From NCBI RefSeq assembly GCF_006345805.1, contig NC_043014.1, positions 14,694,001-14,758,000 on the forward strand: DNA of 64,000 bases, read 5' to 3'. Positions within the stretch are counted from its first letter, which is position 1, and each line of letters opens with the position of its first letter. The position numbers and the translations under genes were made by a program. The DNA comes from Octopus sinensis (lineage: Eukaryota). The notes beneath the pieces were generated by a model. The model did no database searches and was not told the origin of the DNA. It saw only the letters and a list, made by a program, of their open reading frames with translations. Below are positions 237 through 36,136 of this stretch, one piece after another.

Positions 237-287
<51 letters not shown>

Positions 288-539
288 ATCCAAACATGGA
301 AACACAAAGAGAAAACACAACAACGTGAGGACATGGAACAAACAAGTATAGTATTATTGGATGCTCAGGAAAGAAGGAGGGTTTAATGTTTCGAGCGGAG
401 CATTTTGTCAGAAATATAGGAAAAGGAAAGATCCAAAGAAGGGAAGACTCAGGAAAAAGAAAAAACAAATCCCTAACGGTACACATGCGGTCACAGTAAA
501 TAAATGGAGTTGAATGCAGGTGTTATTCAAATTCTTTTA

Positions 540-625
540 CTTTCGACATATGTTTCGAAGACAACATTGGTTTTATTCCAAAGGAATAAACGGTGTAAAA
601 TAATGTAATCTTCTCATCAGGAAAG
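540..625 (-). ncRNA. Type I hammerhead ribozyme, apparently intact, in a Penelope-like repeat
   Basis: Minus strand reads CTTTC-CTGATGA-GAAGA...TCTTC-GAAA-CATATG-TC-GAAAG. Stem III is the palindrome ACATATGT; GUC site between 545 and 544. Confidence 0.78.
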
Positions 626-1208
626 AAAGAGAACCTATCTCAACAAGACATTATAACAATTTTGATGACTGCATAAATGATAAACAGAATGCTATATATA
701 TATATATATATATATATATGTTTCTATTTCTTTCTTTCTTTCTTCCTCTCTTCTTTTGGTTTGTCTGTCTATATTTGTGTATATATTTCGCTTAGGCATT
801 GTGAGACTAATAAACTGGTGTAGAACTCAATATATGTTTGTTTTAGAACAAAGTGTTGGCTGAGTACAGAGCAGTGATACGAAAGAAAGATGACAAAGGA
901 ATGAATTATTATCTTATCAACTTCATTAGATTACAGCTGATTCTGCTATAAGATGGACTTGAGACTTTTGCATCGTTGGTGTTGTTTTTTATATAGGCAC
1001 AAATGTAATTCTTTCCCAAATAAATTGCACTTCATATTCAAGGCCCCAGTGAAGATATAAGGTGTTACTCCATCACTCAGATATGAGTGCATTGCATCTT
1101 ATTGCAGAAACAGCTGTAAGCTAATGGAATTCATAAGATAATAATTTATTTCCTCTTTTTCTTAAGTGTGTGTACACATGCATACACATATATATGCATG
1201 TGTGTGTG

Positions 1209-1780: not shown

Positions 1781-3332
1781 ATATATATATATACATGTAT
1801 ATATATATATATATAATTTAAATTTACAGGAAAATGAAAGACAAAGACAGGTGTATAAACAACAAGCTGGTGTGTCAGTTTGGTGCTCTGGAAGGTGAGA
1901 AAGTCTTATACATATATATATATAATAGCTAGAAACTTGGGTCCGTGTGTATCACATCTTTTGTCATTGCTTCAGTTTGACCTGAGCATTTGTGAGTAGA
2001 ATTGAGCAGCAGAAATAAAAAGTATTCAGAAACACACACAAGTGAGTATTTGATGTCTTTAACGTTGCCCTCTTTTCACCTGACACTGTAATCTAGGGAA
2101 ATATTTTACAAACTTTTAATAATTGGCATTAGATAATTGAAATGAGATTATTTAGGTATTTAATCTAGTGTTTAGTGTTGAAAAATGTATCTACTCTATA
2201 TTTTAATCAATTTGATTACTGATAGGCATGTGGTGTCTGTCATGTAAACTTAATGTAAAATATTTTCCTCATTTGTTCAATATATGTTCAGTGTAATGGA
2301 CCGTATTAGTAAATCAATGCATCAGTCTTGTCAAAGATAGTGAGAAACTGGGGATATTTTTTAGAGTACAAGTATCTGTAAATATTCAATCATTTACACT
2401 ACAAATTAACAAGCCCTGCTTGGAAACAGTTTAGAGTTGGTGAGTACAGAGCGAAAATCTGCTGAAAGTTAAGTGCCAATACTCTTTACTCTTTTACTTG
2501 TTTCAGTCATGTGACTGTGGCCATGCTGGAGCACCGCCTTTAGTTGAGCAAATCAACCCCAGGACTTATTCGTTGGAAGCCTAGTACTTATTCTATGACT
2601 CTCTTTTGCCGAACCGCTAAGAGACGGGGACATAAACACACCACCATTTGTTGTCAAGTGATGCTGGGGGGACAAACACAGACACACAAACATACACACA
2701 CATACATATATACAACAGGCTTCTTTCAGTTTCCGTCTACCAAATCCACTCACAAGGCTTTGGTCGGCCCGAGGCTATAGTAGAAGACACTTGCCCAAGG
2801 TGCTACGCAGTGGGAATGAACCCGGAACCATGTGGTTGGTAAGCAAGCTACTTACCACACAGCCACTCCTGCGCCTATGCATAAAACTTCAAAATTTTTT
2901 CAGTCTGATGCAACAAGTGCCACAAACCCAATTGTCAGGATGCAGGATTTGAACAGAGTCATCTTCTTTTAGATGAATAACACAAGAGCTGAAGAGCCCT
3001 ATCTGCCCTGGGTCCACTGGGGTGTTTGTGACAATGACCTTCATCTGGAGGCTTTTTCTATAGCTGGGACTTTCATAGGGACTATAACTCTGGCTCAGCT
3101 CTGGGAACAATTATAGCTAAGAGGTGGTTCCACACTCCTCAAAACCTGGACTACCCAAACCAGAGCACTATAAGAGGGTGCAGTTTAAAGGCATACGTGG
3201 GTTGCAGCTATATACTCTCACTTACCTGAAGTGAACATTTAAGTTCGAGGGTCCGCATACACACAAATGTAGGAGAAACAAAATAATGAAAACAAAGCAG
3301 ATTTGATTATAAAAACAGACAACTCTACTCAC

Positions 3333-3503
3333 TTTTAGTGTGTCTACATTTTTGATGATGCTTTCACTGGAACCAAGAATCATGCCAAAAGTAAGTTTTT
3401 CTGGTTTGGTGTTTGGTGGTAATTGAAGCAATGAGTTTATCTCTACCCAATGACTGGCAGTGAATTGGTCCCCTCTGACCCATTTCAGTATAGGCAAAAC
3501 ATT
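3333..3503 (-). CDS. DYNC2H1: Dynein-2 heavy chain exon 11: NVLPILKWVRGDQFTASHWVEINSLLQLPPNTKPEKLTFGMILGSSESIIKNVDTLK
   Basis: Matches recalled IVIPILKYVRGEHLSPDHWLDLFRLLGLPRGTSLEKLLFGDLL (DHC_N2 region). Acceptor ttttccag, donor gtgagt, 171 nt. The 11 exons total 1778 nt and stay in frame. Confidence 0.94.
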
Positions 3504-4384
3504 CTGGAAAAGTTAAAGCAAGAAATCAAAGACATAATTTCCACCAACTGACAAAGAAAGCCATTAAATTTTTATTTTTAAGAAGACCTATGTTCGTTGA
3601 TACAAACAGGAAAACAGAACTCAAAACATGAGTTTATAAACATTTTTAGAATGGTGGGTCAAGGAAGGAGATAAATAATAGCTTCTATAATATTGCTATA
3701 GTGACCTGAAACTTTGTCTGGGACAAAAGTGTATAAAAAAAAAAAAAAACCCTCCAAAAAAACGCCTCCTCCCCAAAAAAACCTTGCACCACTTGCTTGC
3801 GATTTTTCATTCTTTGATACACAACAGCAGACAAAAATCAGCCATCTTTGTCATTGTAATCTTTTAATGTTTCATTCTTTTACTTGCCTCAAAGGGTTTT
3901 AGTCCAAGAAATCAACCGCAAAACTTATTCTTTGTAAGCCTAGTACTTATTCTATTGGCCCCTTTTGCTGAACTGCTAAGTTACGAGGATGGAAACACAC
4001 CAGCATTGATTGTCAAATGATAGCAGGGAAACAAACACAGACACACACGTAAATATATACATACATACATACATATATATACATATGATGGGCTTCTTTC
4101 AGTTTCTGTCTAACAAATCCACTCACAAGGCTTTGGTCGACCTAAGGCTAGAATAGAGGAAACTTGCCCAAGGTACCATGCAGTGGGACTGAACCTGGAA
4201 CTATGTGGTTGTGAAGCAAGCTTCTTACCACAAAGCCACACCTGCACCTATTGTATGAGTACACTTATTTTGTTTTTCTCTTTCTTTCTGCAGGATCTTT
4301 ATCCTCAGATGCCTTTTCTATGACCAACTGATTTACAGCATGACCACAGAGCATTTTAGTGAACTAGAGAGGTTTGTTTCCAAC

Positions 4385-8796: not shown

Positions 8797-9548
8797 GTTT
8801 CAAACACCTATCTTAATAATGATTTTAAATTTTGCTACAGCTTGGGGGGGGGGGATTAAGTCAATTACATTGAATCCAGTGCATAACTGGTATTTATTTA
8901 ATTGACCTCAAAAGGATGAAAAGTAAAGTCAACCTCAGCAGAATTTGTACTTAGAAGACAGCAAGCTGGCGGAAAGGTTAGCACGCTGGGCGAAATGCTT
9001 AGTGGTATTTCATCTGCTGTTACATTCTGAGTTCAAATTTCGCCAAGGTCAACTTTGCCTTTCATCCTTTCAGGGTTGATAAAATAAGTACCAGTTACGC
9101 ACTGGGGTTGATATAATCGATTTAATCTATTTGTCTGTCCTTGTTTGTCCTCTCTGTGTTTAGCCCCCTGTGGGTAGTAAAGAAATAGGTATTTCATCTG
9201 CCGCTACGTTCTGAGTTCAAATTCCGCCGAGATCAACTTTGCCTTTCATTCTTTCGGGGTCGATGAATTAAGTACCAGTTATGCACTGGGGTCGATGTAA
9301 TCGATTTAGTCCCTTTGTCCGTCCTTGTTTGACTCCTGTATGTTTAGCTCCTTGTGGGCAATGAAGAAATAAGAATTTGGACTCAATGTAAAGACAGACG
9401 AAATACTGCTAAGCATTTTGCCTGGTGTGCTAACGATTCTGCCAGCTCGCCACCTTAAACACTATCTTAATAATAGTCAAGTTATTTTGTTAAATTCATT
9501 GTTATTTTCCAGATTAATTGAAACATAGACTGTGTATTTTAACAGACA

Positions 9549-11545
9549 CTAACTCAATGACCCGGCGTTGCCTGAGTTACTGCTGTTCTTATTCAGATTA
9601 GAAAACAATAAATATAAAGATATATTCTCATAATTATTTCAAAATATCTATATTTTATTAAAATAATATCCAAATTGTAATGATAATAGAATTTTGAACT
9701 GAAAGTCTGTCAATGTTGAATCACCTCAGAGTAAACAATATTCACTGTATAATTTTTTGTTAGTGTCGAAATGAATAAATTCTTGCTGCTTCCAAGTCAT
9801 GAGGAAGCAACATAGGGTTGGCCATGGGAGAAGTATGTAGTAGAGAGATCAATACAACTACATTGAGGGATTGACCCTGACATTTGTTAATTGAAATGCC
9901 AAAACTTAATTTGATTGGACACTGAAGCCTCTTAAATTCAAATGTGGTATGAGAGGAAATTTGATTGGACACTGAAGCCTCTTAAATTCATCTGTGGTAT
10001 GAGAGGAAATTTTGATATAAAGACATTTTCTTGTTTGTGACTAACTGTTATGATTGTTGCCTGTAGGACATGGGGCTTCATAGAAGTAATTAAGCGAGTT
10101 CCATTACACTGGCGAGATGGGTCAAGATTCCTAAGCAACAATAATGGGGCACCCAGTTTTAGTGTTAAGTTATGCAGTGGTATCCCAGTGGGTTTAAGTA
10201 TGTTCAGAAATTCAACAGGGTATTGAACAACCTGATCTTGATCGACTGTTGTCAATAAATCAAAAAGTCATTTCTGATGCATCTGTTAAATTTTGAAGAA
10301 GTTCATGATTCAGTTTACCAACCATTTCATTAGTTGTAGCCAGTATGGCTCTTTCACATAACCAGTTTACATCAGTCTAATTGACCGATAAATTAGGAAA
10401 TACTTTATCCATAAGATCCCAAAGAGAAAGTCTCATTTGACCGCATGTAATTTCATGTAGCTGAAGTCTTGAGTTGAAAGTCAAAACCCCATTATCAGTC
10501 TTGGGCAGCTTGTATGATCATCTTACTCTTATGTCGCTTGTAAGATGAAGTTTTTTCACTTGTCTCCAAAAGTACAATTTTTGTAAGAATGTACTGACCT
10601 CATCAGCTTTGATCCTTTGGCAACATTTGATGTAAATCTCTTCCAAAAAGAACTGTTACTCCTCCCACGAGCATGCTATTGTTTTTTATGTCTTGGAGGC
10701 TACAGCCAACTACCTCCAGTGCTCTATGATGTGACATAGTGCACTGATCCCAAACAATGAGGCAAGTTTGTTGGAGAACTGTTGCCATTGCAGAGTTTTG
10801 GAAATGATGCACATTTGAGATTCTTTCATTGCAAGGTTTACAGCGAGTCTGAACATGGAATGAGCAGTCCTACCCCTATTGAGGAGGGTAGCTGCAATAC
10901 CAGAAGATACAACACTGGAAGAAGGTTAGATTTTATTTCCTCCCATTTAGGATTGCAGGTGAGAGTGACAAAAAGGTCTGGTTTTCCATATGTCCTGACA
11001 TATGTCATAACATCTTGTGTTCGTTCATGCATATATCAAGGACTGCATGTGAATGATGATGGAAGGATTATACATTGCCCCATGTTTCAAATATCACCAG
11101 CTGTCTTCAGAGCATCTTGGAGATGGACATAATTTTTAGTCCTTAACTTTTTTTGATTGTTACAAATGTAGAGGAGACACTCAATCTCAACTTTAGCGTA
11201 CATATCAACAAGGTATTACTGAAATAGATCACAATACATGTGTAATTGAGTTGATTGTTCTGGTCTTAACATCAGTTGATAAGAATAGAAGTCATTTGAC
11301 AACACCTTTTTGATTATAACTGGCTCTCCTGTAGCAGGTTCAATCTGTGGAATATTGAAATGAAACCCATTCTGTTCATTCCACAAAATAAGAGGATACT
11401 GGAGAACATCATAAGAGGGACGAGTCTCTGAAACATATTTGTTATCTCCAGCACGAATGAGAATATCATGATTTTCGTGGGGATCACCTACCATAAGGAT
11501 AGCTACTTCATTAGATGTGGGCTCAATAAAATACTGTTAAAGGCA
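9549..11545 (-). mobile_element. Degenerate, internally deleted Helitron (Rep-helicase) relic
   Basis: Frameshifted fragments YGKPDLFVTLTCNPKWEEI (Rep region), LIVWDQCTM...GGVTVLFGRDLHQMLP and QYPVEFLN...LLLLRNLDPSRQCNGTRL (PIF1-like helicase). 3' end GCAACGCCGGG...TTAG near 9549; 48-bp tandem duplication at ~9909-10004. Confidence 0.88.
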
Positions 11546-12309: not shown

Positions 12310-12950
12310 ATGTCACCAATACTACCACCACTACCACCACCACCACAACCCACAGTTATGACAACTACATCTAGTACCACTACCACCACCACCACCCCAC
12401 CCACAACTATGGCAACTACATCTAGCACCACTACTACCACCACTGTCACCACCACCACCTCCACTCACAACTATGACAACTATATCTAGTACCACCACCA
12501 CCACCACCACCACCACCACACACAACTGTGACAGCTACATCTGGCACCACTACCACCACAACTGCCACCACCACCACCATGACCACAACCCACAACTATG
12601 ACAACTACATCTAGCACCACTACCACCACCACTGTCACCACCACCACCCCACCCACAACTATGGCAACTACATCTAGCACCACTACTACCACCACTGTCA
12701 CCACCACCACCTCCACTCACAACTATGACAACTATATCTAGTACCACCACCACCACCACCACCACCACCACACACAACTGTGACAGCTACATCTGGCACC
12801 ACTACCACCACAACTGCCACCACCACCACCATGACCACAACCCACAACTATGACAACTACATCTAGCACCACTACCACCACCACCACCACCACCACCACC
12901 CACAACTATGGCAACTACATCTAGCACCACAATCACTACTGCCACCATCA
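12310..12950. repeat. (ACC)n-based compound minisatellite with ~240-bp higher-order duplication
   Basis: Monomer CACAACTATGACAACTACATCTAGCACCACTACC(ACC)n occurs about 11 times; block ~12359-12600 is repeated at ~12601-12850. Confidence 0.85.
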
Positions 12951-21253: not shown

Positions 21254-21440
21254 GTTTTTATTTTTCAATTCCTTCAAAATTTTATCCCTTAATAATGGTT
21301 TGGAATTATATATATATATATATATTCAAAAAGCAATAAAGATTCAAGTTAATTTAAATGAATTTACTTGAATAAGGTACCTAACTTAGATGCACCAAAA
21401 AGAACTATACTGTTTTAACAATACAGTAATGTGGTGTGAT

Positions 21441-21782
21441 TATAAGCGAGAAAGAAGCAACAAGAAGGATAGGTTTTTAGTACAATCGTTCATACAAGGA
21501 CAGGCTTTATTAAAAGTTGTAAAAATTACAGCATATAAACGTGTCCCGTACTCATCAGCAAAATAACATGTGAGTTCTCTAGACCTCCTAGTGGTTGAGG
21601 CTATACTCATGAAGTAATAGCCTCAACCACTAGGATGTCTAGAGAACTCACATGTATTTTAGCTGATGAGTACGGGACACGTTTATATGCTGTAATTTTA
21701 CAACTTTTAATAAAGCCTGTCCTTGTATGAAACGATGTGTACTAAAAACCTATCCATTCTTGTTGCTTCTTTCTCGCGTATA
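21441..21782. repeat. Near-perfect long palindrome (arms ~164 bp, 12-nt loop)
   Basis: 21441-21604 is the reverse complement of 21617-21782 apart from a few indels. Confidence 0.92.
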
Positions 21783-21786
21783 TATA

Positions 21787-22027
21787 ATATATAAAAAAGG
21801 AAATGAAGAAAATGCTGACAAATAATTGAAGTAATTTAAGTAATTTAATTAGGTGAAAGTTCTTTTTACCGGTTGCGCATTTGTTATGCTTATCAAAATA
21901 TGATAAGCATAACATATTTTGATAAGCATAACAAATGCGCAACCGGTTAAAAGAACTTTCACCTAATTAAATTACTTAAATTACTTCAATTATTGTCAGC
22001 ATTTTCTTCATTTCCTTTTTTATATAT
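21787..22027. repeat. Second near-perfect palindrome (arms ~115 bp, 10-nt loop), directly adjacent to the first
   Basis: 21787-21902 is the reverse complement of 21913-22027. Confidence 0.92.
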
Positions 22028-22797
22028 CACCACTCGTGTTCGACATCTCCTTTTTTCTAAATAAATATATATTATATATATATATATATATACACACATA
22101 TATATATATTCAACAGGGTTCTTTCAGTTCTCATTTACCAAATCCACTCACAAGGATTTGGTTGGCCCAGGGCCATGGAAGAAGACACCTGCCCTAGGTG
22201 CCATGCAGTGGGACTGAACCTGGGACTGTAAGGTCAGGAATCAAACTTCTTATCACACAGCCACTCCTGTGTACATGTGTGTACGCAATTATTAACTACA
22301 CTCTTTAATGATACGCATAATCTTGCTACAATGTCCACGAGAAATAAACTTAAAACAAATATGCTTATGTAAAGTTTCAAAAGTGGAGATAAATTGGTTT
22401 GCTGTGAAGAAGAAGAAGAAGAAGAAGAGGAAATAACTAATAGATATATACACACACATTTACACACAATGCTTTCTTTTGACTCACATATACAAACAAG
22501 TGTAAATTATACATACATTAAATATACATATGTACTAAACACAGTATAACTTTTCTTTTGAGGAAAATTGCAATGCTCTAAACTATTTGCAAATCTCCCA
22601 CCTCTCTCTACCTGTGTGTGTGTGTGTGTTGCACGCACTTGCATGTGTGTGTGTATGTTGTATATATATATATATGCTTACATATATTTTCACTTCTCTT
22701 TCACTCTCTATCCTATCTAATTATTTATCAATCTAAAAACACACACACAAACACACACTTCTTTCTCTCTCTGTCTATCTATTTATCAATCTATATA

Positions 22798-22830
<33 letters not shown>

Positions 22831-23227
22831 CTGTCTGTCTGTCTCTCTCTCTCTGTCTCACTCGGTAATCATGTCTCAGAGACATTCTAACAGAAGGTAA
22901 GTTAGGAGAGCTGAGAAGCGAGTCTATTTAATGAAAAGTTAATTACAACAGACAAGATGTAAGGCCACACACACACACATGTTTAGAACTTATTCAAAGC
23001 CACCATTTCGTATTGCTGAAAACGTTAGCACATTTTTCTATACAACTCTGAGAAAATTGCTTCCTAATGAATCACAAATTGGATGTAACATTTAAGAGGC
23101 TTCTAAGTGGTCTGTTTCACTGATAGAAAGATTTTTTTTTTAATTCAATAAATCACTAAGAATATGTAGAGTAATGGATATAAGAAATGATATTTCTTTG
23201 ATAATAATGATGATAATAATAATAATG

Positions 23228-23257
<30 letters not shown>

Positions 23258-23260
<3 letters not shown>

Positions 23261-23700
23261 TACATGTTTTGTCTGGGTATAAAAGATGGGCTACAGCAAA
23301 TATTCTGCTCAATACTACAGATTTGCTTGTCAGATCCTGGTCACATTGTGAAATGTCCCCTTGGTGGTGGACAATATGTGCATCTCTGTGTTGAGAGGAA
23401 TTCTTTGGGGTTTGAATAATTTACCCTTGGAAACATGGATGTTTCATTTAACATCCTTAAACAAACCTTATTCAGGGTCCTTTTGAGCAGGATGGGCTAC
23501 TTGGTCTAAAGAAAATTCTGACTGGGCCCCACCTGCAAGATCATGCACTGTTTATCTTGATATGAGATCACCATGTCACACACATATGCTTGTGATGCAT
23601 GTGCTTCGTGTACCCTTATCAGATGGGTAGTCATGATGGGTGTTCCGAGGCTTGTATATTGGTACCCATGTGTCACTTTGATGGCATGCACTGCTCTATC
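23258..23700. repeat. Interspersed repeat; inverted family copy at ~54163-54560
   Basis: About 300 bp are reverse-complement similar (e.g. CTACAGCAAATATTCTGCTCAATAC / GTATTGAGCAGAATATTTGCTGTAG). Confidence 0.75.
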
Positions 23701-24141
23701 GCACAATAATAATAATAATAATAGTAATAAAGCATGATCAGTAAACAAGTGTCACCTTAATCTGCTGGCTGAAGCAATGTCACTACATGTGTGCTGTTGG
23801 CAATTTCTTCTTTACCATATTTGGTCTTACCTTCTTTGGTCTTTCTCATTTCCAAGGAAGACCGATGCTCAAAATGTCAAACTCTCTCCTTTCACCAAGT
23901 GTCAAGCTAATACATTCCTTGTGCACATCCTCACATTTGTTTTTTTTTATTTGAATTGACTATATATATATATATATCATCATCATCATCGTTTAACGTC
24001 CGCTTTCCATGCTAGCATGGGTTGGACGGTTCAACTGGGGTCTGGGAAGCCCGAAGGCTGCACCAGGCCAGTCAGATCTGCCAGTGCATCTACAGCTGGA
24101 TGCCCTTCCTAACGCCAACCACTCCGTGAGTGTAGTATATG

Positions 24142-24177
<36 letters not shown>

Positions 24178-24778
24178 GCTTGTATGTTGCTTTTGTGCGA
24201 ACTGCCATGCTACACGACTGTGCTGGTATGGTCTTGTGTTATGTATGGATGAGGACAGCTGTGAGGAAGTGCCACTCCCAGGAAGACATGGCATGAGATA
24301 GTGAAGCATGACCTTCGAACAGTGGGCCTCACAGAGGCAATGACAGGAGACCATGACCTTTGGAGATATGCTGTGATTGAGAAGATCCGGCAACTAAAGT
24401 GAGATGGCAGCTATGGCCAATGCCAATGTTGCATGTCCAGCCCATTTAAGAGTACCCTTGATGCGTTGGGTGAGATAATATGCTTGAGAAGACCTGTTGA
24501 GTCAAGTAAACCCAAAATTGCAGCTGTGGCTAGTGCCCCCTGACTGGCTCCCGTGCTGGTGGTACATAAAAAGCACCTACTACACTCTCGGAGTAGTTGC
24601 ATTATGAAGGGCATCCAGCTGTAGAAACATTGCCAGATCAGATTGGAGCCTGGTGCAGCCACTGGCTCTATAGACCTCAGTCAAACTGTCCAACCCATGC
24701 CATCATGGGAAACAGACGTTAAACAATGATGATGATGATGATGATAATAATATATATATATATATATATATATAAAGA

Positions 24779-25062
24779 TTATTTGCCAACATAATGTGGC
24801 AGTCTTAGTTAGGACGAATGTTACTGTTATTTATCCCCAGGAAGCATCGTCTACAGCTGGCTATACAACACTCTATCTGCATCCTTATATTTTTGAACAA
24901 GGGAGTTTAGCATCCGCACTATGTGGGAATGCTAAACTCCCTTGTTTGAAAACAAAGGAAGCAGATAACATATCGTATAGCCAGTTCGAGATGATTTTTC
25001 CTGGGGCTAAATAACAGTAACATTCGTCCTAACCAGGACTGCCACATTATGTTGGCAAATAA
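24779..25062. mobile_element. Fold-back MITE-like element (284 bp, palindromic throughout)
   Basis: Ends TTATTTGCCAACATAATGTGGCAGTC / GACTGCCACATTATGTTGGCAAATAA; centre AACAAGGGAGTTTAGCAT / ATGCTAAACTCCCTTGTT. Confidence 0.85.
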
Positions 25063-25179
25063 TTTTTACTCTAGAGCACTGTTACTGAATGTCTTCTCTT
25101 GTTGAGAGATTTAGAAATAATAATTTATATATATATAAAAAAGTTTTTGTCCGTCTTGAGGCTGATAGAGGTTCCTTGT

Positions 25180-25262
25180 CTTTCCTGATGAGAAGACGGC
25201 ATAATGCACCCTTTATTCCTTCGGAATTAAGAATATGCAGTCTTCGAAACATGTGTTGAAAG
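25180..25262 (+). ncRNA. Type I hammerhead ribozyme, same family as 540-625, GUU cleavage triplet
   Basis: CTTTC-CTGATGA-GAAGAC...GTCTTC-GAAA-CATGTG-TT-GAAAG, with an inner TTTATTCC/GGAAT hairpin as in the 540-625 copy. Confidence 0.72.
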
Positions 25263-25957
25263 TAAAGGTATTTTGTTAAAATCTTCGTTCGACTCCATTC
25301 TTTCATTTATTCTTTTTAAAAAAAAAAATATATATATATATGTATGTATGTATGTATATACATATTTCACTTTCATTTAACCAAATTCACTTACAAGGCT
25401 TTGGTCAGCCCAAAGCTATTGTAGAAGACATTAGCCCAAGTTGCCATGCTGTAGGATTGAATCCAAAAGCATATGGTTAGGGTGCATACTTCGTACCACA
25501 CAGCCATGCCTGCACCTTCCTGTGAAACCAAGCGTTACCCTAGCAAGAATTCAATGCCACAGGCCATTGTTTCTTTTAGAAGAATTCACGTTACCTGCCG
25601 TGAACTATTGCTTCACCTGTTGGTCAGCTCTTTGATCACAAATTCACAAAGTTTGTACCCAGCTCTCTTACTCTCTCTCTCTTTTACTGTTTTACTTGTT
25701 TCAGTCATGTGACCATGGCCATGCTGGAGCACCGTCTTTAGTCAAGCAAATCGACCCCAGGACTTATTCTTTGGAAGCCTAGTACTTATTCTATTGGTCT
25801 CTTTTTTTTGAACTGCTAAGTTACAGGGACGTAAACACACCAGCATCGGTTGTCAAGCGAATAATAAATAATAAATAACATTTACACGAATAAATGAATA
25901 ATAAAAAAAACATTTACACAAAAATAAAAATGCAACAAGAAAAAAAAGAATAATTAC

Positions 25958-26157
25958 TTGAGACTTTCACCAGTTTCACACAACTTATTAAAATCCTCGA
26001 GCTTCTCTTTAACAATCTCAAGATCCTGGTCACATTGTGAAATGTCCCCATCAAAAGATAGGTTCTGCTCTGCTTGTTCCCATCTATCAGCGAATTTCTG
26101 AACAGCAGTGTGGAAGGATGCAACATCAGATTCCAAATTGTTTCTCATAACATCCAT
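25958..26157 (-). CDS. DYNC2H1: Dynein-2 heavy chain exon 8: MDVMRNNLESDVASFHTAVQKFADRWEQAEQNLSFDGDISQCDQDLEIVKEKLEDFNKLCETGESL(K)
   Basis: Collinear with recalled IEVMKGNVKSRLQIYYQELEKFKARWDQLKP. Acceptor ctctttcag, donor gtaatt, 200 nt. Confidence 0.9.
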
Positions 26158-26579
26158 CTGAAAGAGAAATAAATAGGTAATCAGAAAGACGGATATCTTT
26201 TAATCTTCGTCTTCTATTTTTTACTTGTGTCAGTCATTAGTCTGTAGCCATGTTGGGGCACTACTCTGAAGAATTTTAGTCAATCAAATCGATTCCGGTA
26301 CTTATTTTTTTAAAGCCTGGTACTTACTCCATTGGTCTCTTTTGCCAAATGACTAAGTCATGGGGTCATAAATATACAAGTTGTCAAGTGGTGGTGAGAG
26401 ACAAACACATATACAAAGACACACACAAACACATATAACAAATGAAAGTAAGAAAAAATGGAATTTATGATGACATCAGGTACCCAAAGACAGTGGACAT
26501 GCTTTAAATGGCATAGTACCAAGTGTATACCTACATTTGAAATAATCACTATGTGTATATATACATATAGATATATATA

Positions 26580-26754: not shown

Positions 26755-27187
26755 AATATGCTTCAACACACGAACTCATATAAAGAATCTTGCAAACCAA
26801 ATCTCAAAACGAAATACATATATATATATATAAATAAAAACTTACTTGGAGAAGCGAAATGAAGAGAAACGACGCGTGCGTTCGGTCATATAATAATATA
26901 ATAAATAAATAAAATATATGCATATATACATACATATATGTACATACTTACATCTACATGTATATATACAAGCATATATATATATATATATATGAGTACA
27001 GGACACCACAAATAAACATAGAACACAACAAGAAACGAAAACAAAATCAAACAAGGAAACGGACTTTATTTAACAACGAAAAAACAGAGTACAGGACAAA
27101 CAATACAAGGAAAATTCCCCTTCATCAGTTGTCCCTGGTTTGGCTCAATGCATGTTCTAAGATATATATATATATAATATATATATA

Positions 27188-28478
27188 CAGGGTGCAGTGA
27201 ATAAACACTAAATTATGCAAAAACGAAAATAACACTGACATCTTATTTTAACAGTTATATTTACCAAAATTACATTAAAATATCTTGAAATACTAAAAAG
27301 TAATTTTATTCAGTAAAATCGCCATTAGCTTCAACCACAGCCTCCAGACAACTTCTGAATCTCCTGCAACTCTTCAGGACGGTCTCCTTGTTTAAGTTGG
27401 TGAATGCTGCCATAATCCTTGGCTTCAGTTCATCTTTGGTGTTACAAGGAGTTTTGTTGGTCTCTCGCTCAATTGCACCCCACACATAATAATCAAGTGG
27501 GTTGCAGTCTGGAGAGTTAGGTGGCCAGATGTTGGGGGTGATGTGGTTGCAGAAATCGTGTGACAGCCATGACTGGGTCCTCTTGCTTGTGTGGCATGGT
27601 GCAGAGTCTTGTTGCCAGACTCAGGGCGGGACTACCTTCGCCAAGAACTTGATGTAGGCCTCCATGTTGAGTCTGAGGATGTGTGGGAAGATAATGGAGG
27701 CATAATGTCACTATCATTCATGATCACTCCAAACATCATGAGTGTTTTGAGGGGATGTTAGATTTTTATCACTCTTAATACATGTCCTTAGATTGCACTG
27801 TCTTCAGCCTGACACCCAAACACTCTGAAATGTTCATATTGGAATGATCACATATCTCAGCCCTTTGTCATCTCCTTCATAAGGTCCAGCATTTTTTGAG
27901 ATTAGCTTTCAACATTTTATCCATATGATTCCATATAGATAAAGACTATAACTGTGGCCTATGCCAGTGCCTCAGAATTCCTAACCTTGATTCCTGCAAT
28001 GGACCAGCATCTTGTTTAGAGAAAGTATTATGATGTCAGTCACTTATACACCATAAAAACCAGGAAACCAGCCTTATGAGTTTGAGGAATGAAGAAAAAT
28101 TATTATAAAAAAAGTGGCTATGTGGTAAGAAGTTTGCCTCTCAAACACATGGTTCCAGGTTCAGTCCCACTGTGTGGCTCTTTAGGCAAGTGTCTCCTAC
28201 TACAGACCTGATCCAACCAAAGCCTTCTGAGTAGATTTTGCAGACAGAAATTGAAAGAAGCCTATCATATACAGGCGTAGTGGGTAAATTGTCACTATTT
28301 TATATTTTTAATTTCATGCATGTGTATTGTTTGTTTTTGATTTTGTTGACTACACAGTATAGTAGGGTCAGCTGGGCACTGTTTGTCAGAAAAACAGTAC
28401 CATGATGCAATTCACTCTACCAGAAATTTGGAAATGACATACTATAACTGCTTGGTACTCACACCAGAAGTTCCAATA
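27188..28478 (-). mobile_element. maT-like element of the same family as 39809-40963, split by an inversion
   Basis: The 3' part is on the minus strand at 27188-27844 and the 5' part on the plus strand at 28272-28478. Both align by eye to the 39809 copy. Confidence 0.75.
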
Positions 28479-29912: not shown

Positions 29913-31963
29913 CTGAAAGGGGGAACGAAATTGGAAATTATATTTAAAGCACAGCCACAACACTGTAAAAGCAATTTCGGTTTTGTTACGCTGATAAAAC
30001 GTGAGCACCACACAAACTTCAGTTCTAATAAAGAATGACATTTCTCAGGAGCGCCAACAGTAATTACCAATTCTTTTTCATTGCCAATCTATTTTTTCAT
30101 TACCAAAAAAAAAAAAATAAATAAATAAATAAAACAAAATTAAAATAAAATAAAAATAAAACATACAAAAACAATCCATTCTCTCTTTCTTCTGCGTAGA
30201 TGGACTTCATTAAAAAGCAAATTACAATTGATATCATTATTCTCTTTGTTGTATATGCACAGTTTCCTTCGTCGCCTTTCTTGTCACAGTTGTCATCATC
30301 GTCATCATCATCATCATCATCATCATCCTCACCATCATAATTGGTAGTGGTGGTATCATCATCTTCATTGCCATCATTACATTATTAAACACGATCATCA
30401 TCACCATCTCAGTGATGATGATGATAGCAGTGGTGGTGATGATTATGGTGGTGGTGATGATTATGGTGGTAGTGATGATTATGGTGGTAGTGATGATGAT
30501 AATGTTTATCATCAACATCATCGCCTTTGTCATCATCATCAGCAGCAGCAGTAGCAGCACCATCACCTCCACTGGTGTCACCTCATCAAAGTTGTTTCAT
30601 TTCTTACGTTTTTCTCTTCTTACGTAGACTTTTATTCTAATTTAATTAATTAGTAAATGATAGCTTCTTCACTTACATCACCACCATTATTTGTTTTTTG
30701 TTTGTTTGTTTTTGCCCATTTATTTTTCATTTTTTTTTTTTGCATTTGAATTATTACGTTTCTATTGATAAACAGTCGCAAGCATTGAGTGTTTGACGGT
30801 CACATACATCGGCCGTTCCGGAATCAGAAGACTGACAACCAAGATAGTCGACATGGACCAAATGTATAAACAACATTTACTTCCACCTCTGTCATGTCAA
30901 AGTTTAAAGACTTCCATACTTGACATTCTCTTTCATCCTCCTGGTGGTTGAAAAAGAAACCATTCACCTTGATTAGCCAATCAGAAAGCAGCTGATGAAG
31001 ATAATTAGATCTACATGAAAACTCTACAGCTTGCCAAATATTTAATAACTTACCTAAGTCAGAAATCACAATAAGAATCTTTTCATATTTTATTTTCTAT
31101 CTTTTACTTGTTTCAGTCATTGGACAGCAGCCATGCTGGGACACCACCTTGAAGGGTTTTAGTTGAACAAATCAATCCCAGTAGTTATGTTCTTATCTTA
31201 AGAGTGATAATTATTCTATCAGTCTCTTTTGCCAAGCTGCTGGGTTTCAGGGACATAACCCTTTAGTATTTAAACCAGCCATATCTGGCCTGAATATTCT
31301 ACATGTTTTATATTTGAACTAGCCATATCTGGCCTCTTACACCTAACCTATTCTTTCTTTCATTCTTTCTTTTATTCTTTTACTTGTTTCAGTCATTTGA
31401 CTGCGACCATACTGGAGCACCGCCTTTAATCGAGCAACTCGACACCGGGACTTATTCTTTTGTAAGCCCAGTACTTATTCTATCGGTCTCTTTTACCGAA
31501 CCGCTAGATAACGGGGACATAAACACACCAGCATCGGTTGTCATGCAATGCTAGGGGGACAAACATACACACGCATATATATACATATATACGATGGGCT
31601 TCTTTCAGTTTCCATCTACCAAATCCACTCACAAGGCTTTGGTCGGCCCGAGTAGAAGACACTTGCCCAAGGTGTCATGCAGTGGGACTGAACCCGGGAC
31701 CATGTGGTTGGTAAACAAGCTACTTACCACACAGCCACTCCTGCGCCTATATTGACATTCTAAAAATAAATAATCACATCATTGAGATTTCAAAGCCATG
31801 AGATAATGCATGATTAATTCAAAACAATTTGAGGGAAAAGGCATTACATTTAACAGAGTAATCTGAACACTAAAAGGATAAACAAACCAACATTGGTTAT
31901 CAAGCAGTGGGGGAGCACAAACACAGACACACACATGCACATTCATACATACATACATATGTA

Positions 31964-34011: not shown

Positions 34012-36136
34012 ACTTTGCATTGGACACATCAGTGGATGGTCCTTCAATAAAGTTGCAAAGACTGCTAACTAGCAAAAAATTGTGGGATGCAAATAGGATT
34101 GCTAGTTTCCTATGAAGTAGAAATGTGCATTGGGCACATTTAAATCAAATGTGCTGTGTAATTACTCTCTTTACCCCTTACTCTTTTACTTGTTTCAGTC
34201 ATTTGACTGCGGCCATGCTGGAGCACCTCCTTTAATCGAGTAAATCAACCCTAGGACTTATTCTTTGTAAGCCTAGTACTTATTCTATCGGTCTCTTTCG
34301 CCGAACCGCTAAGTTACGGGGACGAAAATACACCAGCATCGGTTATCAAGCGATGTTGGGGAGACAAACACAGACACACAAACATATACACACGCATACA
34401 TATATATATATATATACACATATATACGATGGGCTTATTTCAGTTTCCGTCTACCAAGGCTTTGGTTGGCCCGAGGCTATAGCAGAAGACACTTGCCCAA
34501 AGTGTCACGCTGTGGGAATGAACCCAGAACCATGTGCTTGGTAAGCAAGCTACTTACCACACAGCCACTCCTGTTACTATGACTGTAGAAATGAGAAAAA
34601 TACACAGATGTATTAATCTTTGTATTTATTTTAATTGTCTTGGATACACACTCGGTAAAATATTTGTAATCCAGTGAAGTGAACCCAGGATTTCTCTATA
34701 GGATGAATTACAGTAGGATCGCTTACCTTAAGTAATCCTAGGTGCTCCTAACAAATTGATGCAGTTGACCAGAACCCAGAATACAACTGAGTGCTCTTAT
34801 GGTACCCGCCTCAATAATAAATCCCTATCTATATTTATTCACCATACATACACACACACATGTAAAAACGGTGCTTTTACACATTTTCCTGTATTTTTGC
34901 CCATAGCACTGTTTTTTCTTGTATGTGTGCATATAGATGTATGATCATTTTTGTGTGTGTGTGTGTGTGTGTGTGCGTGCATAGACGTGTGCGTGTGCAT
35001 AAGGATATGTGCATATATAGATGTGGTTTACTCTTTGTATACTCCCTTGTGCCTTTTTCTGTATTGCTAACCTTAACCCTGTTTTTTCTTGTCTTTGTGC
35101 ATATATAGACGTGTGTATGAACCTTTATGGTGCGCATGTGTGTGTGAGTTTGTATGTATATATATATATACATTTAATGAAGGATGAGAGTGAGGATGTG
35201 TATGTTTCAAGTGAGGGTGGATGAATGTATACTCTTAGGTGCACGCATGTGGGTGTGTGGGCGCACATGTGTAGGTATAAACAGGCGCGCTTACGTGATT
35301 ACTATGAACTTTTTTTACCCCCTTACTTTACTCCCTCTCCTTACTTAGCGGTCATTCGAATAGCTCTTTTGTCTTAATAACAGTCAATCACACAGTAATT
35401 TCCCTTTGTATAACGCTCATTTTTCATAGCATTTTTCCGATGGCCAGATAACTAAAGAGATGGCAGTGTGAATTTCCACTTTGGCATCCGAAAGTCGAAG
35501 TTTTATCATGGCTACCAAATAATTATCACACATTACATTTAGAGATAAATTCCTCTATTTATGTAATATCGAGGTCTCTTTCTTTCTTTTGTTGTCTTAC
35601 CATTTTTATCAATATATATATATATATATATAATATATAGTTGATCCAAACATGAAAACACAAAGAGAAAACACAAGAACGCAAGGACGTGGAACAAGTA
35701 TAGTATTATTGAATGCTCAGGAAAGAAGGAGGGTTTAACGTTTCAAGTGGAGCTCTTTGTCAGAAACATAGGAAAAGGAAAGATCCAAAGAAGGGAAGAT
35801 GGAGGAAAAAAAAATCGCCAATGGTACACATGCGGTCACATTTTGAATGACCGGAAGGGAATGGGTGAAGAAAAATTTCTTTCAAAGACAGGAGAGTGCA
35901 AGAGGAGGTGTGTAAGTGTGGATATGTGCATGCGTGCAGGTCTGTGTGTGTGTGGTTGTGGCTGTTAATCTATGTGTATGGTAGGGCTTAGTATCGTTTA
36001 AGGTTAAGGAAAAATGAAGTAGGAGTGGCTCTTGTGCCTACCTACCCATGTGCGTTGAAGAATGGTCAGTGAAAGGTACTGGTAGTTTGAAGTATGTGTG
36101 TGTGTGTGTATGTGTATGTATTGTGTGTAGTGTGTT

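What the first reader, a model, noticed from the sequence alone, without database searches (positions are those of the whole stretch)
540..625. Intact hammerhead on the same strand as the dynein pre-mRNA
The minus strand gives a complete type I hammerhead: stem I CUUUC/GAAAG (extendable to about 13 nt with two mismatches), core CUGAUGA, stem II GAAGA/UCUUC with an inner UUUAUUCC/GGAAUAAA hairpin, GAAA, palindromic stem III ACAUAUGU, and GUC. It lies downstream of exon 3333-3503 in the direction of DYNC2H1 transcription, so it is presumably transcribed as intron. Inference: a cis-active ribozyme here could cut the nascent transcript. A dimer requirement would explain why the host tolerates it.
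Basis: partly seen in the sequence, partly recalled or inferred. Interest (0 to 1): 0.75.

Follow-up and report, generated by a model that had tools for sequence, protein, structure and literature searches.

The report
Transposon-borne hammerhead ribozyme in dynein intron
The sequence is a complete hammerhead self-cutting RNA motif, but it rides on a short repeated mobile-element fragment that landed in an intron of the dynein-2 gene, a known and fairly ordinary situation in animal genomes and probably of little consequence for the gene.

Summary
The minus strand 635..530 carries every conserved hammerhead core base, three helices in type I topology, and a cleavage site between 545 and 544. 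A descriptor scan found three hammerheads in the window and none in 300 dinucleotide shuffles. It is not a lone motif. A homologous copy (about 76% identical over about 140 bp) lies on the plus strand at 25156-25324. Its core is intact (GUU instead of GUC), with three compensatory pair changes and the same 54-57 nt helix II domain. An unrelated second hammerhead family sits in a palindrome at 21440-21780. The exon at 3503..3333 is DYNC2H1 on the minus strand, so copy A is sense and intronic. My best reading is a solo copy of a hammerhead-bearing retroelement, of the Penelope-like element or retrozyme lineage, inserted at a (TA)n microsatellite. The two-base-pair palindromic helix III fits a ribozyme built to act in tandem copies. 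As a single intronic copy it is predicted to fold into the active form rarely. Published work shows that slow intronic ribozymes do not disturb splicing. No Rfam hammerhead model matches any of the three. No reverse transcriptase was found nearby, so the element class is inferred. This is a new member of a known kind, of modest interest.

The parts
530..635 (-). Hammerhead ribozyme motif, copy A, type I (helix I open), sense to DYNC2H1
   Evidence: Direct reading. Descriptor hit, with 0 hits in 300 shuffles. Own covariance model scores 127 bits.
621..635 (-). Helix I, 5' strand (GGUUCUCUUUCUUUC)
   Evidence: Pairs with 544..530. 13 of 15 positions pair, including 2 G-U pairs.
614..620 (-). Core box CUGAUGA (C3 to A9)
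   Evidence: Identical in copy B.
557..613 (-). Extended helix II domain, 57 nt: 6-bp helix GAAGAU/GUCUUC, a 1x1 mismatch, 5-bp helix ACAUU/AAUGU, an internal loop, and the terminal hairpin 590..572
   Evidence: RNAfold gives the same architecture for copies A and B. There are two compensatory pair changes and one one-sided change in this domain.
553..556 (-). Core box GAAA (G12, A13, A14, A15.1)
546..553 (-). Helix III: A15.1-U16.1 and C-G around the loop AUAU. The 8-nt stretch ACAUAUGU is a palindrome.
   Evidence: The self-duplex is predicted at -7.0 kcal/mol, and the full double-hammerhead dimer is predicted as the cofold minimum.
544..545 (-). Predicted cleavage site: 3' of C17 (545), before G1.1 (544)
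   Evidence: Position of H17 in the descriptor hit. Cleavage itself was not tested.
530..544 (-). Helix I, 3' strand (GAAAGUAAAAGAAUU)
496..649 (-). Whole repeat unit carrying copy A, about 150 bp
   Evidence: The nhmmer profile of A plus B matches 649..496.
25156..25324 (+). Copy B of the same repeat, antisense to DYNC2H1. Hammerhead at 25170-25272, CUGAUGA at 25185-25191, cleavage triplet GUU with U17 at 25257. Followed by A11 and (TA)n.
   Evidence: 118.7 bits.
693..718 (.). (TA)n microsatellite 51 bp upstream (in RNA sense) of repeat unit A
240..495 (-). A separate repeat abutting the 3' end of unit A and ending in (TA)22. It is not part of the hammerhead element.
   Evidence: It is 87% identical to 35612-35840, where no hammerhead precedes it.
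3333..3503 (-). DYNC2H1 exon (57 codons, phase 0) upstream of copy A in the direction of transcription
   Evidence: Translation. Matches PDB 4rh7/6rla dynein-2 heavy chain at E 2e-7. Colinear with the ORF at 26199..25957.

Best explanation
Positions 635..530 (minus strand) encode a genuine type I hammerhead ribozyme motif. It is the cargo of a roughly 150-bp interspersed repeat. It is most likely a solo or truncated copy of a hammerhead-bearing retroelement of the Penelope-like element (PLE) or non-LTR retrozyme lineage, inserted at a (TA)n microsatellite inside a DYNC2H1 intron.

In the parent element, the ribozyme would serve to cut multimeric element transcripts. Its helix III has only two base pairs around a palindromic loop. 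Two neighbouring copies can therefore swap strands and form an 8-bp helix III, the 'double hammerhead'.

Here a single sense copy is transcribed passively as intron RNA. No partner lies on the same strand within at least 63 kb. The copy is therefore expected to reach the active fold rarely, and to cut slowly or not at all. Any slow cutting of an intron is tolerated, so it has no host function.

Shown here:
- the motif and its non-random nature;
- membership of a repeat family;
- sense, intronic location;
- the structure-preserving pattern of substitutions;
- the lack of a tandem partner.

Inferred:
- the class of the parent element;
- low activity in place;
- neutrality for the gene.
For: - The full core and three helices sit at the stated coordinates.
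- The descriptor scan gave 3 hits versus 0 in 300 shuffles.
- A second family copy lies at 25156-25324 on the other strand. Only these two copies exist in the window, even with an unfiltered covariance-model scan.
- Substitutions between the copies avoid the core: 12 of 13 core bases are identical, and the one change is an allowed H17 C/U. Helix I and helix III columns are 83% identical, the helix II domain as a whole 70% and the flanks 60%.
- Of 34 pairs, 27 are unchanged, 3 are compensatory, 1 is one-sided and 3 are broken. 95.6% of cells pair, against 34-50% when the partners are slid.
- Helix III is ACAUAUGU. The cofold minimum is the strand-swapped double hammerhead, at -47.6 versus 2 x -20.1 kcal/mol.
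- The predicted occupancy of the monomer active fold is 0.8% in isolation and about 1e-5 to 1e-6 with flanks.
- Copy B has (TA)n tracts of 6 or more repeats within 60 bp of both ends, which holds for 0.6% of random 140-bp segments. Copy A has one such tract upstream.
- A second, unrelated hammerhead family lies in a head-to-head palindrome at 21440-21780. This arrangement is described for PLEs.
- Literature:
  - Metazoan PLE hammerheads have a small palindromic helix III, a large helix II, a short helix I and a G10.1-C11.1 pair. They occur mostly as dispersed single motifs, and show no detectable cleavage as single motifs and low activity as dimers (PMC4209133).
  - PLEs favour microsatellite targets (PMC8557442).
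  - Retrozymes appear to derive from PLE pseudo-LTRs, and 44% of Xenopus copies are intronic (10.64898/2026.07.22.740005).
  - Slow intronic hammerheads do not affect splicing (PMC2995048, PMC10919898).
Against: - No reverse transcriptase or GIY-YIG endonuclease ORF was seen near either copy or among the long ORFs of the window. No tandem copy exists. The PLE/retrozyme assignment therefore rests on the style of the ribozyme and on its target site.
- The unpaired base between A9 and G10.1 that is typical of PLE mini-hammerheads is absent.
- No Rfam hammerhead model matches.
- Only two family members could be compared. The shuffle control for covariation is weak: 61 of 500 shuffles reach the observed value.
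- Invertebrate hammerheads with a 2-bp helix III plus tetraloop can cut as monomers; the mussel ribozyme has kobs of about 0.1 per min (PMC7229834). Activity in place therefore cannot be excluded.
- Nearest-neighbour energies ignore the tertiary stabilisation of the hammerhead core.
- (TA)n tracts are common in this window, and other repeats also end in them.
Confidence: 0.68

Rival explanations
1. One reading: the single intronic copy is catalytically active in cis as a monomer. It cuts the nascent DYNC2H1 pre-mRNA often enough to matter, lowering or modulating splicing of the flanking exons.
For: - The core is intact, with GUC, a G10.1-C11.1 pair and stable helices I and II.
- Invertebrate-type helix III (2 bp plus tetraloop) supports monomer cleavage in mussel and coral retrozymes (PMC7229834).
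- Intronic ribozymes can tune expression, as shown for the Cpeb3 ribozyme (PMC10919898).
Against: - No recognisable loop 1 / loop 2 for the tertiary contact that gives fast cleavage at physiological Mg2+. Helix I and helix II continue as long helices.
- The active fold is predicted to be rare, especially in context.
- PLE-type hammerheads showed no detectable cleavage as single motifs (PMC4209133).
- Slow intronic hammerheads do not reduce splicing (PMC2995048).
- A paralogous copy in antisense orientation shows that the motif is there by transposition.
Confidence: 0.15
2. Domesticated regulator: a transposon-derived hammerhead kept by selection in this intron, like the amniote intronic hammerheads in RECK and CTCL, for alternative processing of DYNC2H1.
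For: - Sense orientation and a fully intact core, despite about 24% divergence from its paralogue.
- The sense arm of the other hammerhead family (21465-21574, minus strand) has a broken core, while copy A does not.
- A precedent exists for domesticated intronic hammerheads (PMC6155905).
Against: - The antisense copy B is equally intact, so intactness is a property of the family and not of the locus.
- No orthologous sequence could be examined.
- The location is deep in an intron, between a microsatellite and another repeat.
Confidence: 0.05
3. The carrier is a different kind of mobile element, for instance a SINE-like short retroposon with its own hammerhead (as Sm-alpha of Schistosoma), rather than a PLE or retrozyme fragment. 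The consequences for the host are the same.
For: - Both copies share nearly the same short unit of about 140-165 bp, with similar 5' ends.
- Copy B ends in A11.
- No PLE coding sequence was seen in the ORFs inspected: those of 60 aa or more at 1-4 kb and 17-28.5 kb, and ten of the longest ORFs elsewhere.
Against: - No A-box/B-box pair or tRNA-like head lies in the shared unit. Only a GGTTC pentamer is present (direct reading).
- With two copies, the unit ends cannot be fixed.
Confidence: 0.12
4. Chance resemblance: an AT-rich intron happens to spell a hammerhead.
For: Rfam hammerhead models do not match. The fold z-score of the region is only -1.24.
Against: 0 of 300 shuffles give any descriptor hit, against 3 observed. 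A homologous second copy has a conserved core and compensatory changes.
Confidence: 0.01

Closest known systems
Hammerheads of Penelope-like elements (Cervera and de la Pena 2014, PMC4209133)
   Same: - Type I topology.
- Tiny palindromic helix III.
- Larger than usual helix II, and a short helix I with an ill-defined loop 1.
- G10.1-C11.1 pair.
- Occurrence mostly as dispersed single motifs, sometimes as close inverted pairs.
- Families with compensatory changes.
- Neighbourhood of microsatellites.
   Different: - No unpaired base between A9 and G10.1.
- Helix II carries a 54-57 nt three-part domain, much longer than the 6-8 bp described.
- No PLE ORF or pseudo-LTR could be shown in the window.
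Metazoan non-LTR retrozymes (PMC7229834; 10.64898/2026.07.22.740005)
   Same: - Type I hammerhead with a 2-bp helix III capped by a palindromic tetraloop, the invertebrate style.
- Low G+C.
- Monomer copies scattered through the genome, many in introns.
   Different: - Not in a tandem array: two copies, on opposite strands, 24.6 kb apart.
- No canonical 6-bp helix I / 4-bp helix II with interacting loops.
- The unit shared by the two copies is only about 150 bp.
Newt satellite 2 and avocado sunblotch viroid 'double hammerheads'
   Same: Helix III is too weak for a stable single hammerhead, and a palindromic sequence lets two copies form an extended helix III. The same strand-swapped dimer is the predicted cofold minimum here.
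   Different: Those act within multimeric transcripts of tandem or rolling-circle origin. Here only one sense copy is available in the transcript.
Amniote intronic hammerheads HH9 (RECK) and HH10 (CTCL) (PMC6155905)
   Same: Type I hammerhead in sense orientation in an intron of a protein-coding gene, thought to descend from retroelement ribozymes.
   Different: Those are conserved across orders of animals and match Rfam models RF02275 and RF02277. This one matches neither, has a paralogue elsewhere in the same gene, and its conservation could not be tested.
Sm-alpha SINE hammerhead of Schistosoma
   Same: A short interspersed element carrying a type I hammerhead.
   Different: Sm-alpha has a Pol III promoter and a compact ribozyme with loop-loop contacts that cleaves well as a monomer. 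Neither feature is seen here.

Membership tests
Hammerhead ribozyme, type I | Conserved core: C3 U4 G5 A6 N7 G8 A9, G12 A13 A14, A15.1-U16.1, H17 | tested here: met
   CUGAUGA at 620..614, GAAA at 556..553, U16.1 at 546, C17 at 545.
Hammerhead ribozyme, type I | Three helices around the core, with helix I open and helices II and III closed | tested here: met
   Helix I has 13 pairs in 15 positions. Helix II has 6+5+8 pairs. Helix III has 2 pairs plus a tetraloop.
Hammerhead ribozyme, type I | Loop 1 / loop 2 tertiary contact needed for fast cleavage at physiological Mg2+ | tested here: inconclusive
   No canonical loops are present. Only a conserved U-U mismatch in helix I and a 1x1 mismatch in helix II could play that part.
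Hammerhead ribozyme, type I | Match to the curated covariance models (Rfam RF00163, RF02275, RF02277 and relatives) | tested here: not met
   No hit at gathering score in the window. No hit at E up to 10 around copy A, or around copies B and C. The long helix II insert is the likely reason, but this was not tested.
Hammerhead ribozyme, type I | Self-cleavage 3' of H17, giving 2',3'-cyclic phosphate and 5'-OH ends | not testable with these tools
   Needs transcription and cleavage assays.
Penelope-like element pseudo-LTR hammerhead | Lies in the direct repeats flanking an RT plus GIY-YIG ORF | tested here: not met
   No such ORF among ORFs of 60 aa or more at 1-4 kb and 17-28.5 kb, or among ten of the longest ORFs elsewhere. 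Most genomic PLE hammerheads are solo copies, so this does not exclude descent from a PLE (PMC4209133).
Penelope-like element pseudo-LTR hammerhead | Ribozyme style: minimal palindromic helix III, enlarged helix II, short helix I, G10.1-C11.1, extra base between A9 and G10.1 | tested here: inconclusive
   Four of the five traits are present. The extra base is absent.
Penelope-like element pseudo-LTR hammerhead | Insertion bias for microsatellites | tested here: inconclusive
   Copy B is flanked by (TA)n on both sides, which holds for 0.6% of random segments. Copy A has it on one side, which holds for 9%. Other repeats in this window also end in (TA)n.
Non-LTR retrozyme | Head-to-tail tandem repeats of about 170-400 bp, each with one hammerhead on the same strand | tested here: not met
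   Only two copies, on opposite strands, 24.6 kb apart. No tandem repeat was reported at either hammerhead locus; 1-30000 was scanned.
Non-LTR retrozyme | Expression as small circular RNAs | not testable with these tools
   No transcriptome data are available.
Domesticated intronic hammerhead (HH9/HH10 type) | Sense orientation within an intron of a host gene | tested here: met
Domesticated intronic hammerhead (HH9/HH10 type) | Conservation at the orthologous position across distant species | not testable with these tools
   No eukaryotic genome collection was at hand. The metagenome scans gave only an unrelated bacterial hit.

The most novel reading that the evidence does not exclude
The two copies represent an undescribed hammerhead class. 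In it, a conserved 54-57 nt three-part helix II domain stands in for the usual loop-loop contact, which would explain why every Rfam hammerhead model misses it. Under this reading the sense copy in the DYNC2H1 intron is active as a monomer and modulates processing of the dynein-2 pre-mRNA.
Probability: 0.06. Interest if true: 0.6.

Novelty: new member of a known kind. Interest (0 to 1): 0.3.

Why it matters
It adds one more case to the well-documented link between hammerhead ribozymes and animal retroelements. It also shows in practice that curated covariance models can miss complete hammerheads when helix II carries a long insert: all three hammerheads in this window escaped Rfam. If the family proved abundant in the source genome, it would be a useful marker of Penelope-like element or retrozyme activity there. 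A sense-oriented intact copy in a long ciliary dynein gene would be a convenient natural test of how much intronic self-cleavage a gene tolerates. As it stands, nothing indicates an effect on the gene.

Tried and rejected
- Rfam scans, at gathering score on the whole window and at E up to 10 on 300-900 and 21400-25400, gave no hammerhead family. I judge this a limit of the models, because the descriptor and the paralogue are unambiguous.
- I searched for more family members. The nhmmer profile and an unfiltered covariance model found only copies A and B in the window. The remaining model hits are generic palindromes that score on both strands.
- Two exact-pattern scans of metagenome contigs gave nothing, then one unrelated hit upstream of a bacterial gene that appears to be triosephosphate isomerase, L001.
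- Protein-word searches gave nothing, both with the exon peptide and with a spurious ORF lying across copy B, which I tried as a way to reach other assemblies. The source species and orthologous loci could therefore not be examined.
- I looked for PLE coding remnants. None appeared in ORFs of 60 aa or more near the copies, or in ten of the longest ORFs elsewhere.
- I tested whether the repeat at 495..255 belongs to the hammerhead element. It does not. It recurs at 35612-35840 without a hammerhead.
- I tested whether family C (21440-21780) is related to A/B. It is not alignable outside the core and scores only 12.8 bits with the A/B model.
- The pair GGGACAA-CUGAUGA-AGGG at 27128 and 43858 (minus strand) lacks a GAAA box and is not a hammerhead.

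Full report
**The observation.** I read the minus strand from 640 to 530. It gives:
- helix I 5' strand GGUUCUCUUUCUUUC (635..621);
- CUGAUGA (620..614);
- a 57-nt helix II domain (613..557), closed by GAAGAU/GUCUUC and containing the hairpin UUUAUUCC-UUU-GGAAUAAA (590..572);
- GAAA (556..553);
- helix III A-C/G-U around AUAU (553..546, the palindrome ACAUAUGU);
- C17 at 545;
- helix I 3' strand GAAAGUAAAAGAAUU (544..530).

Every base of the hammerhead core is present, together with the G10.1-C11.1 pair. RNAfold forms helices I and II spontaneously.

**Chance.** I wrote a descriptor requiring the full core, helix I of at least 5 bp, helix II of at least 4 bp with a span up to 70 nt, and helix III of at least 2 bp. 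It gave three hits on the two strands of the window and none in 300 dinucleotide-preserving shuffles. The three hits are:
- the finding itself (copy A);
- a homologous copy on the plus strand with CUGAUGA at 25185 (copy B);
- an unrelated hammerhead at 21663-21741 (family C).

Rfam does not recognise any of them, at gathering score or at E up to 10. I attribute this to the long helix II inserts, but I could not test that directly.

**A repeat family, not a lone motif.** Copies A (649..496, minus) and B (25156-25324, plus) align over about 140-165 bp at roughly 76% identity. An nhmmer profile and an unfiltered covariance model built from both find no third copy in the 64 kb.

The differences between the copies are not spread evenly:

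| Region | Identity between A and B |
|---|---|
| Helix I and helix III columns | 83% |
| Helix II domain | 70% |
| Flanks | 60% |

Of the 34 base pairs of the hammerhead fold, 27 are unchanged, 3 changed on both sides with pairing kept, 1 changed on one side with pairing kept, and 3 are broken in B. In all, 95.6% of cells pair, against 34-50% when the partners are slid by 1-3 columns. The compensatory changes are one U-A to C-G in helix I, and A-U to G-C and U-A to A-U in the second helix of the helix II domain.

With two sequences the shuffle control is weak: 61 of 500 shuffles reach the observed value. I take this as supportive, not conclusive. The helix II domain folds into the same three-part shape in both copies: 6 bp, a 1x1 mismatch, 5 bp, an internal loop and a terminal hairpin.

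**Gene context.** The minus-strand exon at 3503..3333 has 57 codons, an AG acceptor and a GTGAGT donor. It matches the human dynein-2 heavy chain at E 2e-7. A minus-strand ORF at 26199..25957 matches the same protein about 160 residues earlier. The gene therefore runs from high to low coordinates, and only about a quarter of the way along a protein of about 4,300 residues has been reached. No dynein-like ORF of 40 aa or more lies between 3225 and 1. Copy A is therefore sense and about 2.7 kb into an intron that continues past the window edge. Copy B is in an upstream intron in antisense orientation.

**What the element is.** Copy B is bracketed by (TA)n tracts and followed by A11. Copy A has a (TA)13 tract 51 bp upstream. 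Downstream it abuts a different repeat (495..255) that itself ends in (TA)22 and recurs at 35612-35840 without any hammerhead. Only 0.6% of random 140-bp segments of the window have (TA) tracts within 60 bp of both ends, and 9% within 60 bp of one end.

Family C sits in an almost perfect palindrome, 21440-21604 against 21617-21780. Its hammerhead is intact on the plus arm, and one A of the GAAA box is lost on the minus arm.

These traits match published descriptions of Penelope-like element hammerheads:
- a small palindromic helix III, an enlarged helix II and a short helix I with no clear loop 1;
- a G10.1-C11.1 pair;
- families with compensatory changes;
- mostly solo copies, and occasional close inverted pairs (PMC4209133);
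- a microsatellite target bias (PMC8557442).

A recent preprint also derives animal retrozymes from PLE pseudo-LTRs (10.64898/2026.07.22.740005).

Against full membership:
- I found no reverse transcriptase or GIY-YIG ORF.
- There is no tandem array.
- The extra base between A9 and G10.1 is missing.

I therefore file the element as a hammerhead-bearing retroelement fragment of that lineage by inference. A SINE-like carrier remains a live alternative.

**How it most likely works.** Helix III is only two pairs around a tetraloop. The 8-nt palindrome lets two copies pair. The predicted minimum for two molecules is the classical strand-swapped double hammerhead, at -47.6 kcal/mol against 2 x -20.1. 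That gain of about 7 kcal/mol corresponds to a micromolar dissociation constant. This is adequate for neighbouring copies in one transcript and far too weak for two separate nascent pre-mRNAs.

For the monomer, the ensemble share of the active secondary structure is about 0.8% for the bare motif and 1e-5 to 1e-6 with 100-300 nt of flanks. Tertiary stabilisation is not modelled in these figures. There are no canonical loops 1 and 2 for the contact that gives fast cleavage.

PLE-type hammerheads showed no detectable cleavage as single motifs and low activity as dimers (PMC4209133). On the other hand, mussel retrozyme hammerheads with the same kind of helix III cut as monomers at about 0.1 per min (PMC7229834). 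Some activity therefore cannot be ruled out.

Whatever the rate, tolerance by the host does not need a dimer requirement. Hammerheads placed in introns leave splicing intact unless cleavage is very fast (Dye et al. 2006 and Fong et al. 2009, as summarised in PMC2995048 and PMC10919898). Some 44% of Xenopus retrozyme copies are intronic (10.64898/2026.07.22.740005).

**Comparison and novelty.** The closest known things are:
- the hammerheads of Penelope-like elements;
- the metazoan non-LTR retrozymes;
- the double hammerheads of newt satellite 2 and avocado sunblotch viroid;
- by location, the domesticated intronic hammerheads of amniotes (PMC6155905).

The finding is a new member of a known kind. 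Its one unusual feature is the long, structurally conserved helix II domain that hides it from Rfam. A full-text search found no paper reporting hammerheads in octopus genomes themselves. The only relevant paper holding both terms is the Penelope-like element study, which merely lists Octopus among its host species. My impression that the window is cephalopod rests on a SINE-like repeat recognised from memory and is unverified.

**Verdict.** It is a real hammerhead, sense and intronic. It is there because a mobile element put it there, and it probably does little. Interest 0.3.

Noticed in passing
window 21440-21780: A second, unrelated hammerhead family sits in a near-perfect head-to-head palindrome, with arms 21440-21604 and 21617-21780 and a 12-nt spacer. 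The plus arm has a complete type I hammerhead: CUGAUGA at 21663, cleavage triplet GUA, A17 at 21741, and a long helix II. The minus arm, which is sense to DYNC2H1, has lost one A of the GAAA box. In the pre-mRNA this palindrome would form a hairpin of about 165 bp.
   Followed up: partly
window 21787-22027: Another long inverted repeat lies immediately downstream of the hammerhead palindrome. Its arms (about 120 nt in all) are 98-100% complementary and 4 nt apart.
   Followed up: no
window 2480-2879 and more than 15 other places (e.g. 37323-36919, 31371-31750, 34172-34581, 3898-4251): A repeat of about 400 bp is scattered through the window in both orientations at 70-87% identity. It is by far the most abundant element here. 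It looks SINE-like, and its class was not determined.
   Followed up: no
window 9004-9378: Two tandem units of 184 bp, 84% matching. From memory their sequence resembles cephalopod SINEs. This is the only hint of the source organism, and it is unverified.
   Followed up: no
window about 9900-11540, minus strand: Broken ORFs with Pif1-like helicase domains: PF05970 at E 8e-10 and PF21530 at E 7e-14. They are probably a decayed Helitron-type transposon inside the dynein gene.
   Followed up: partly
window 27309-27620, minus strand: A 104-aa ORF with a weak match to the DDE_3 transposase family (E 2e-4, below Pfam's cut-off). It looks like a Tc1/mariner remnant.
   Followed up: partly
window 255-495 and 35612-35840: A repeat of about 230 bp, 87% identical between its two copies. 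It starts with TGTGACCGCATGTGTACC and ends in a (TA)n tract at both sites. It abuts hammerhead copy A but is independent of it.
   Followed up: partly
window 12314-12930: A complex tandem array with periods of 9, 64 and 252 bp, rich in ACC/CAC triplets.
   Followed up: no
window 27128 and 43858, minus strand: Two related sequences read GGGACAA-CUGAUGA-AGGG(G)AAUUU. They contain the first hammerhead box but have no GAAA box, so they are not hammerheads. They are probably part of another repeat.
   Followed up: no
L001 2280-2333 (metagenome contig Ga0308173_10052518): The only exact match to the relaxed pattern in metagenome contigs lies just upstream of a bacterial gene that appears to encode triosephosphate isomerase. 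It is unrelated to the family and is a chance match.
   Followed up: yes
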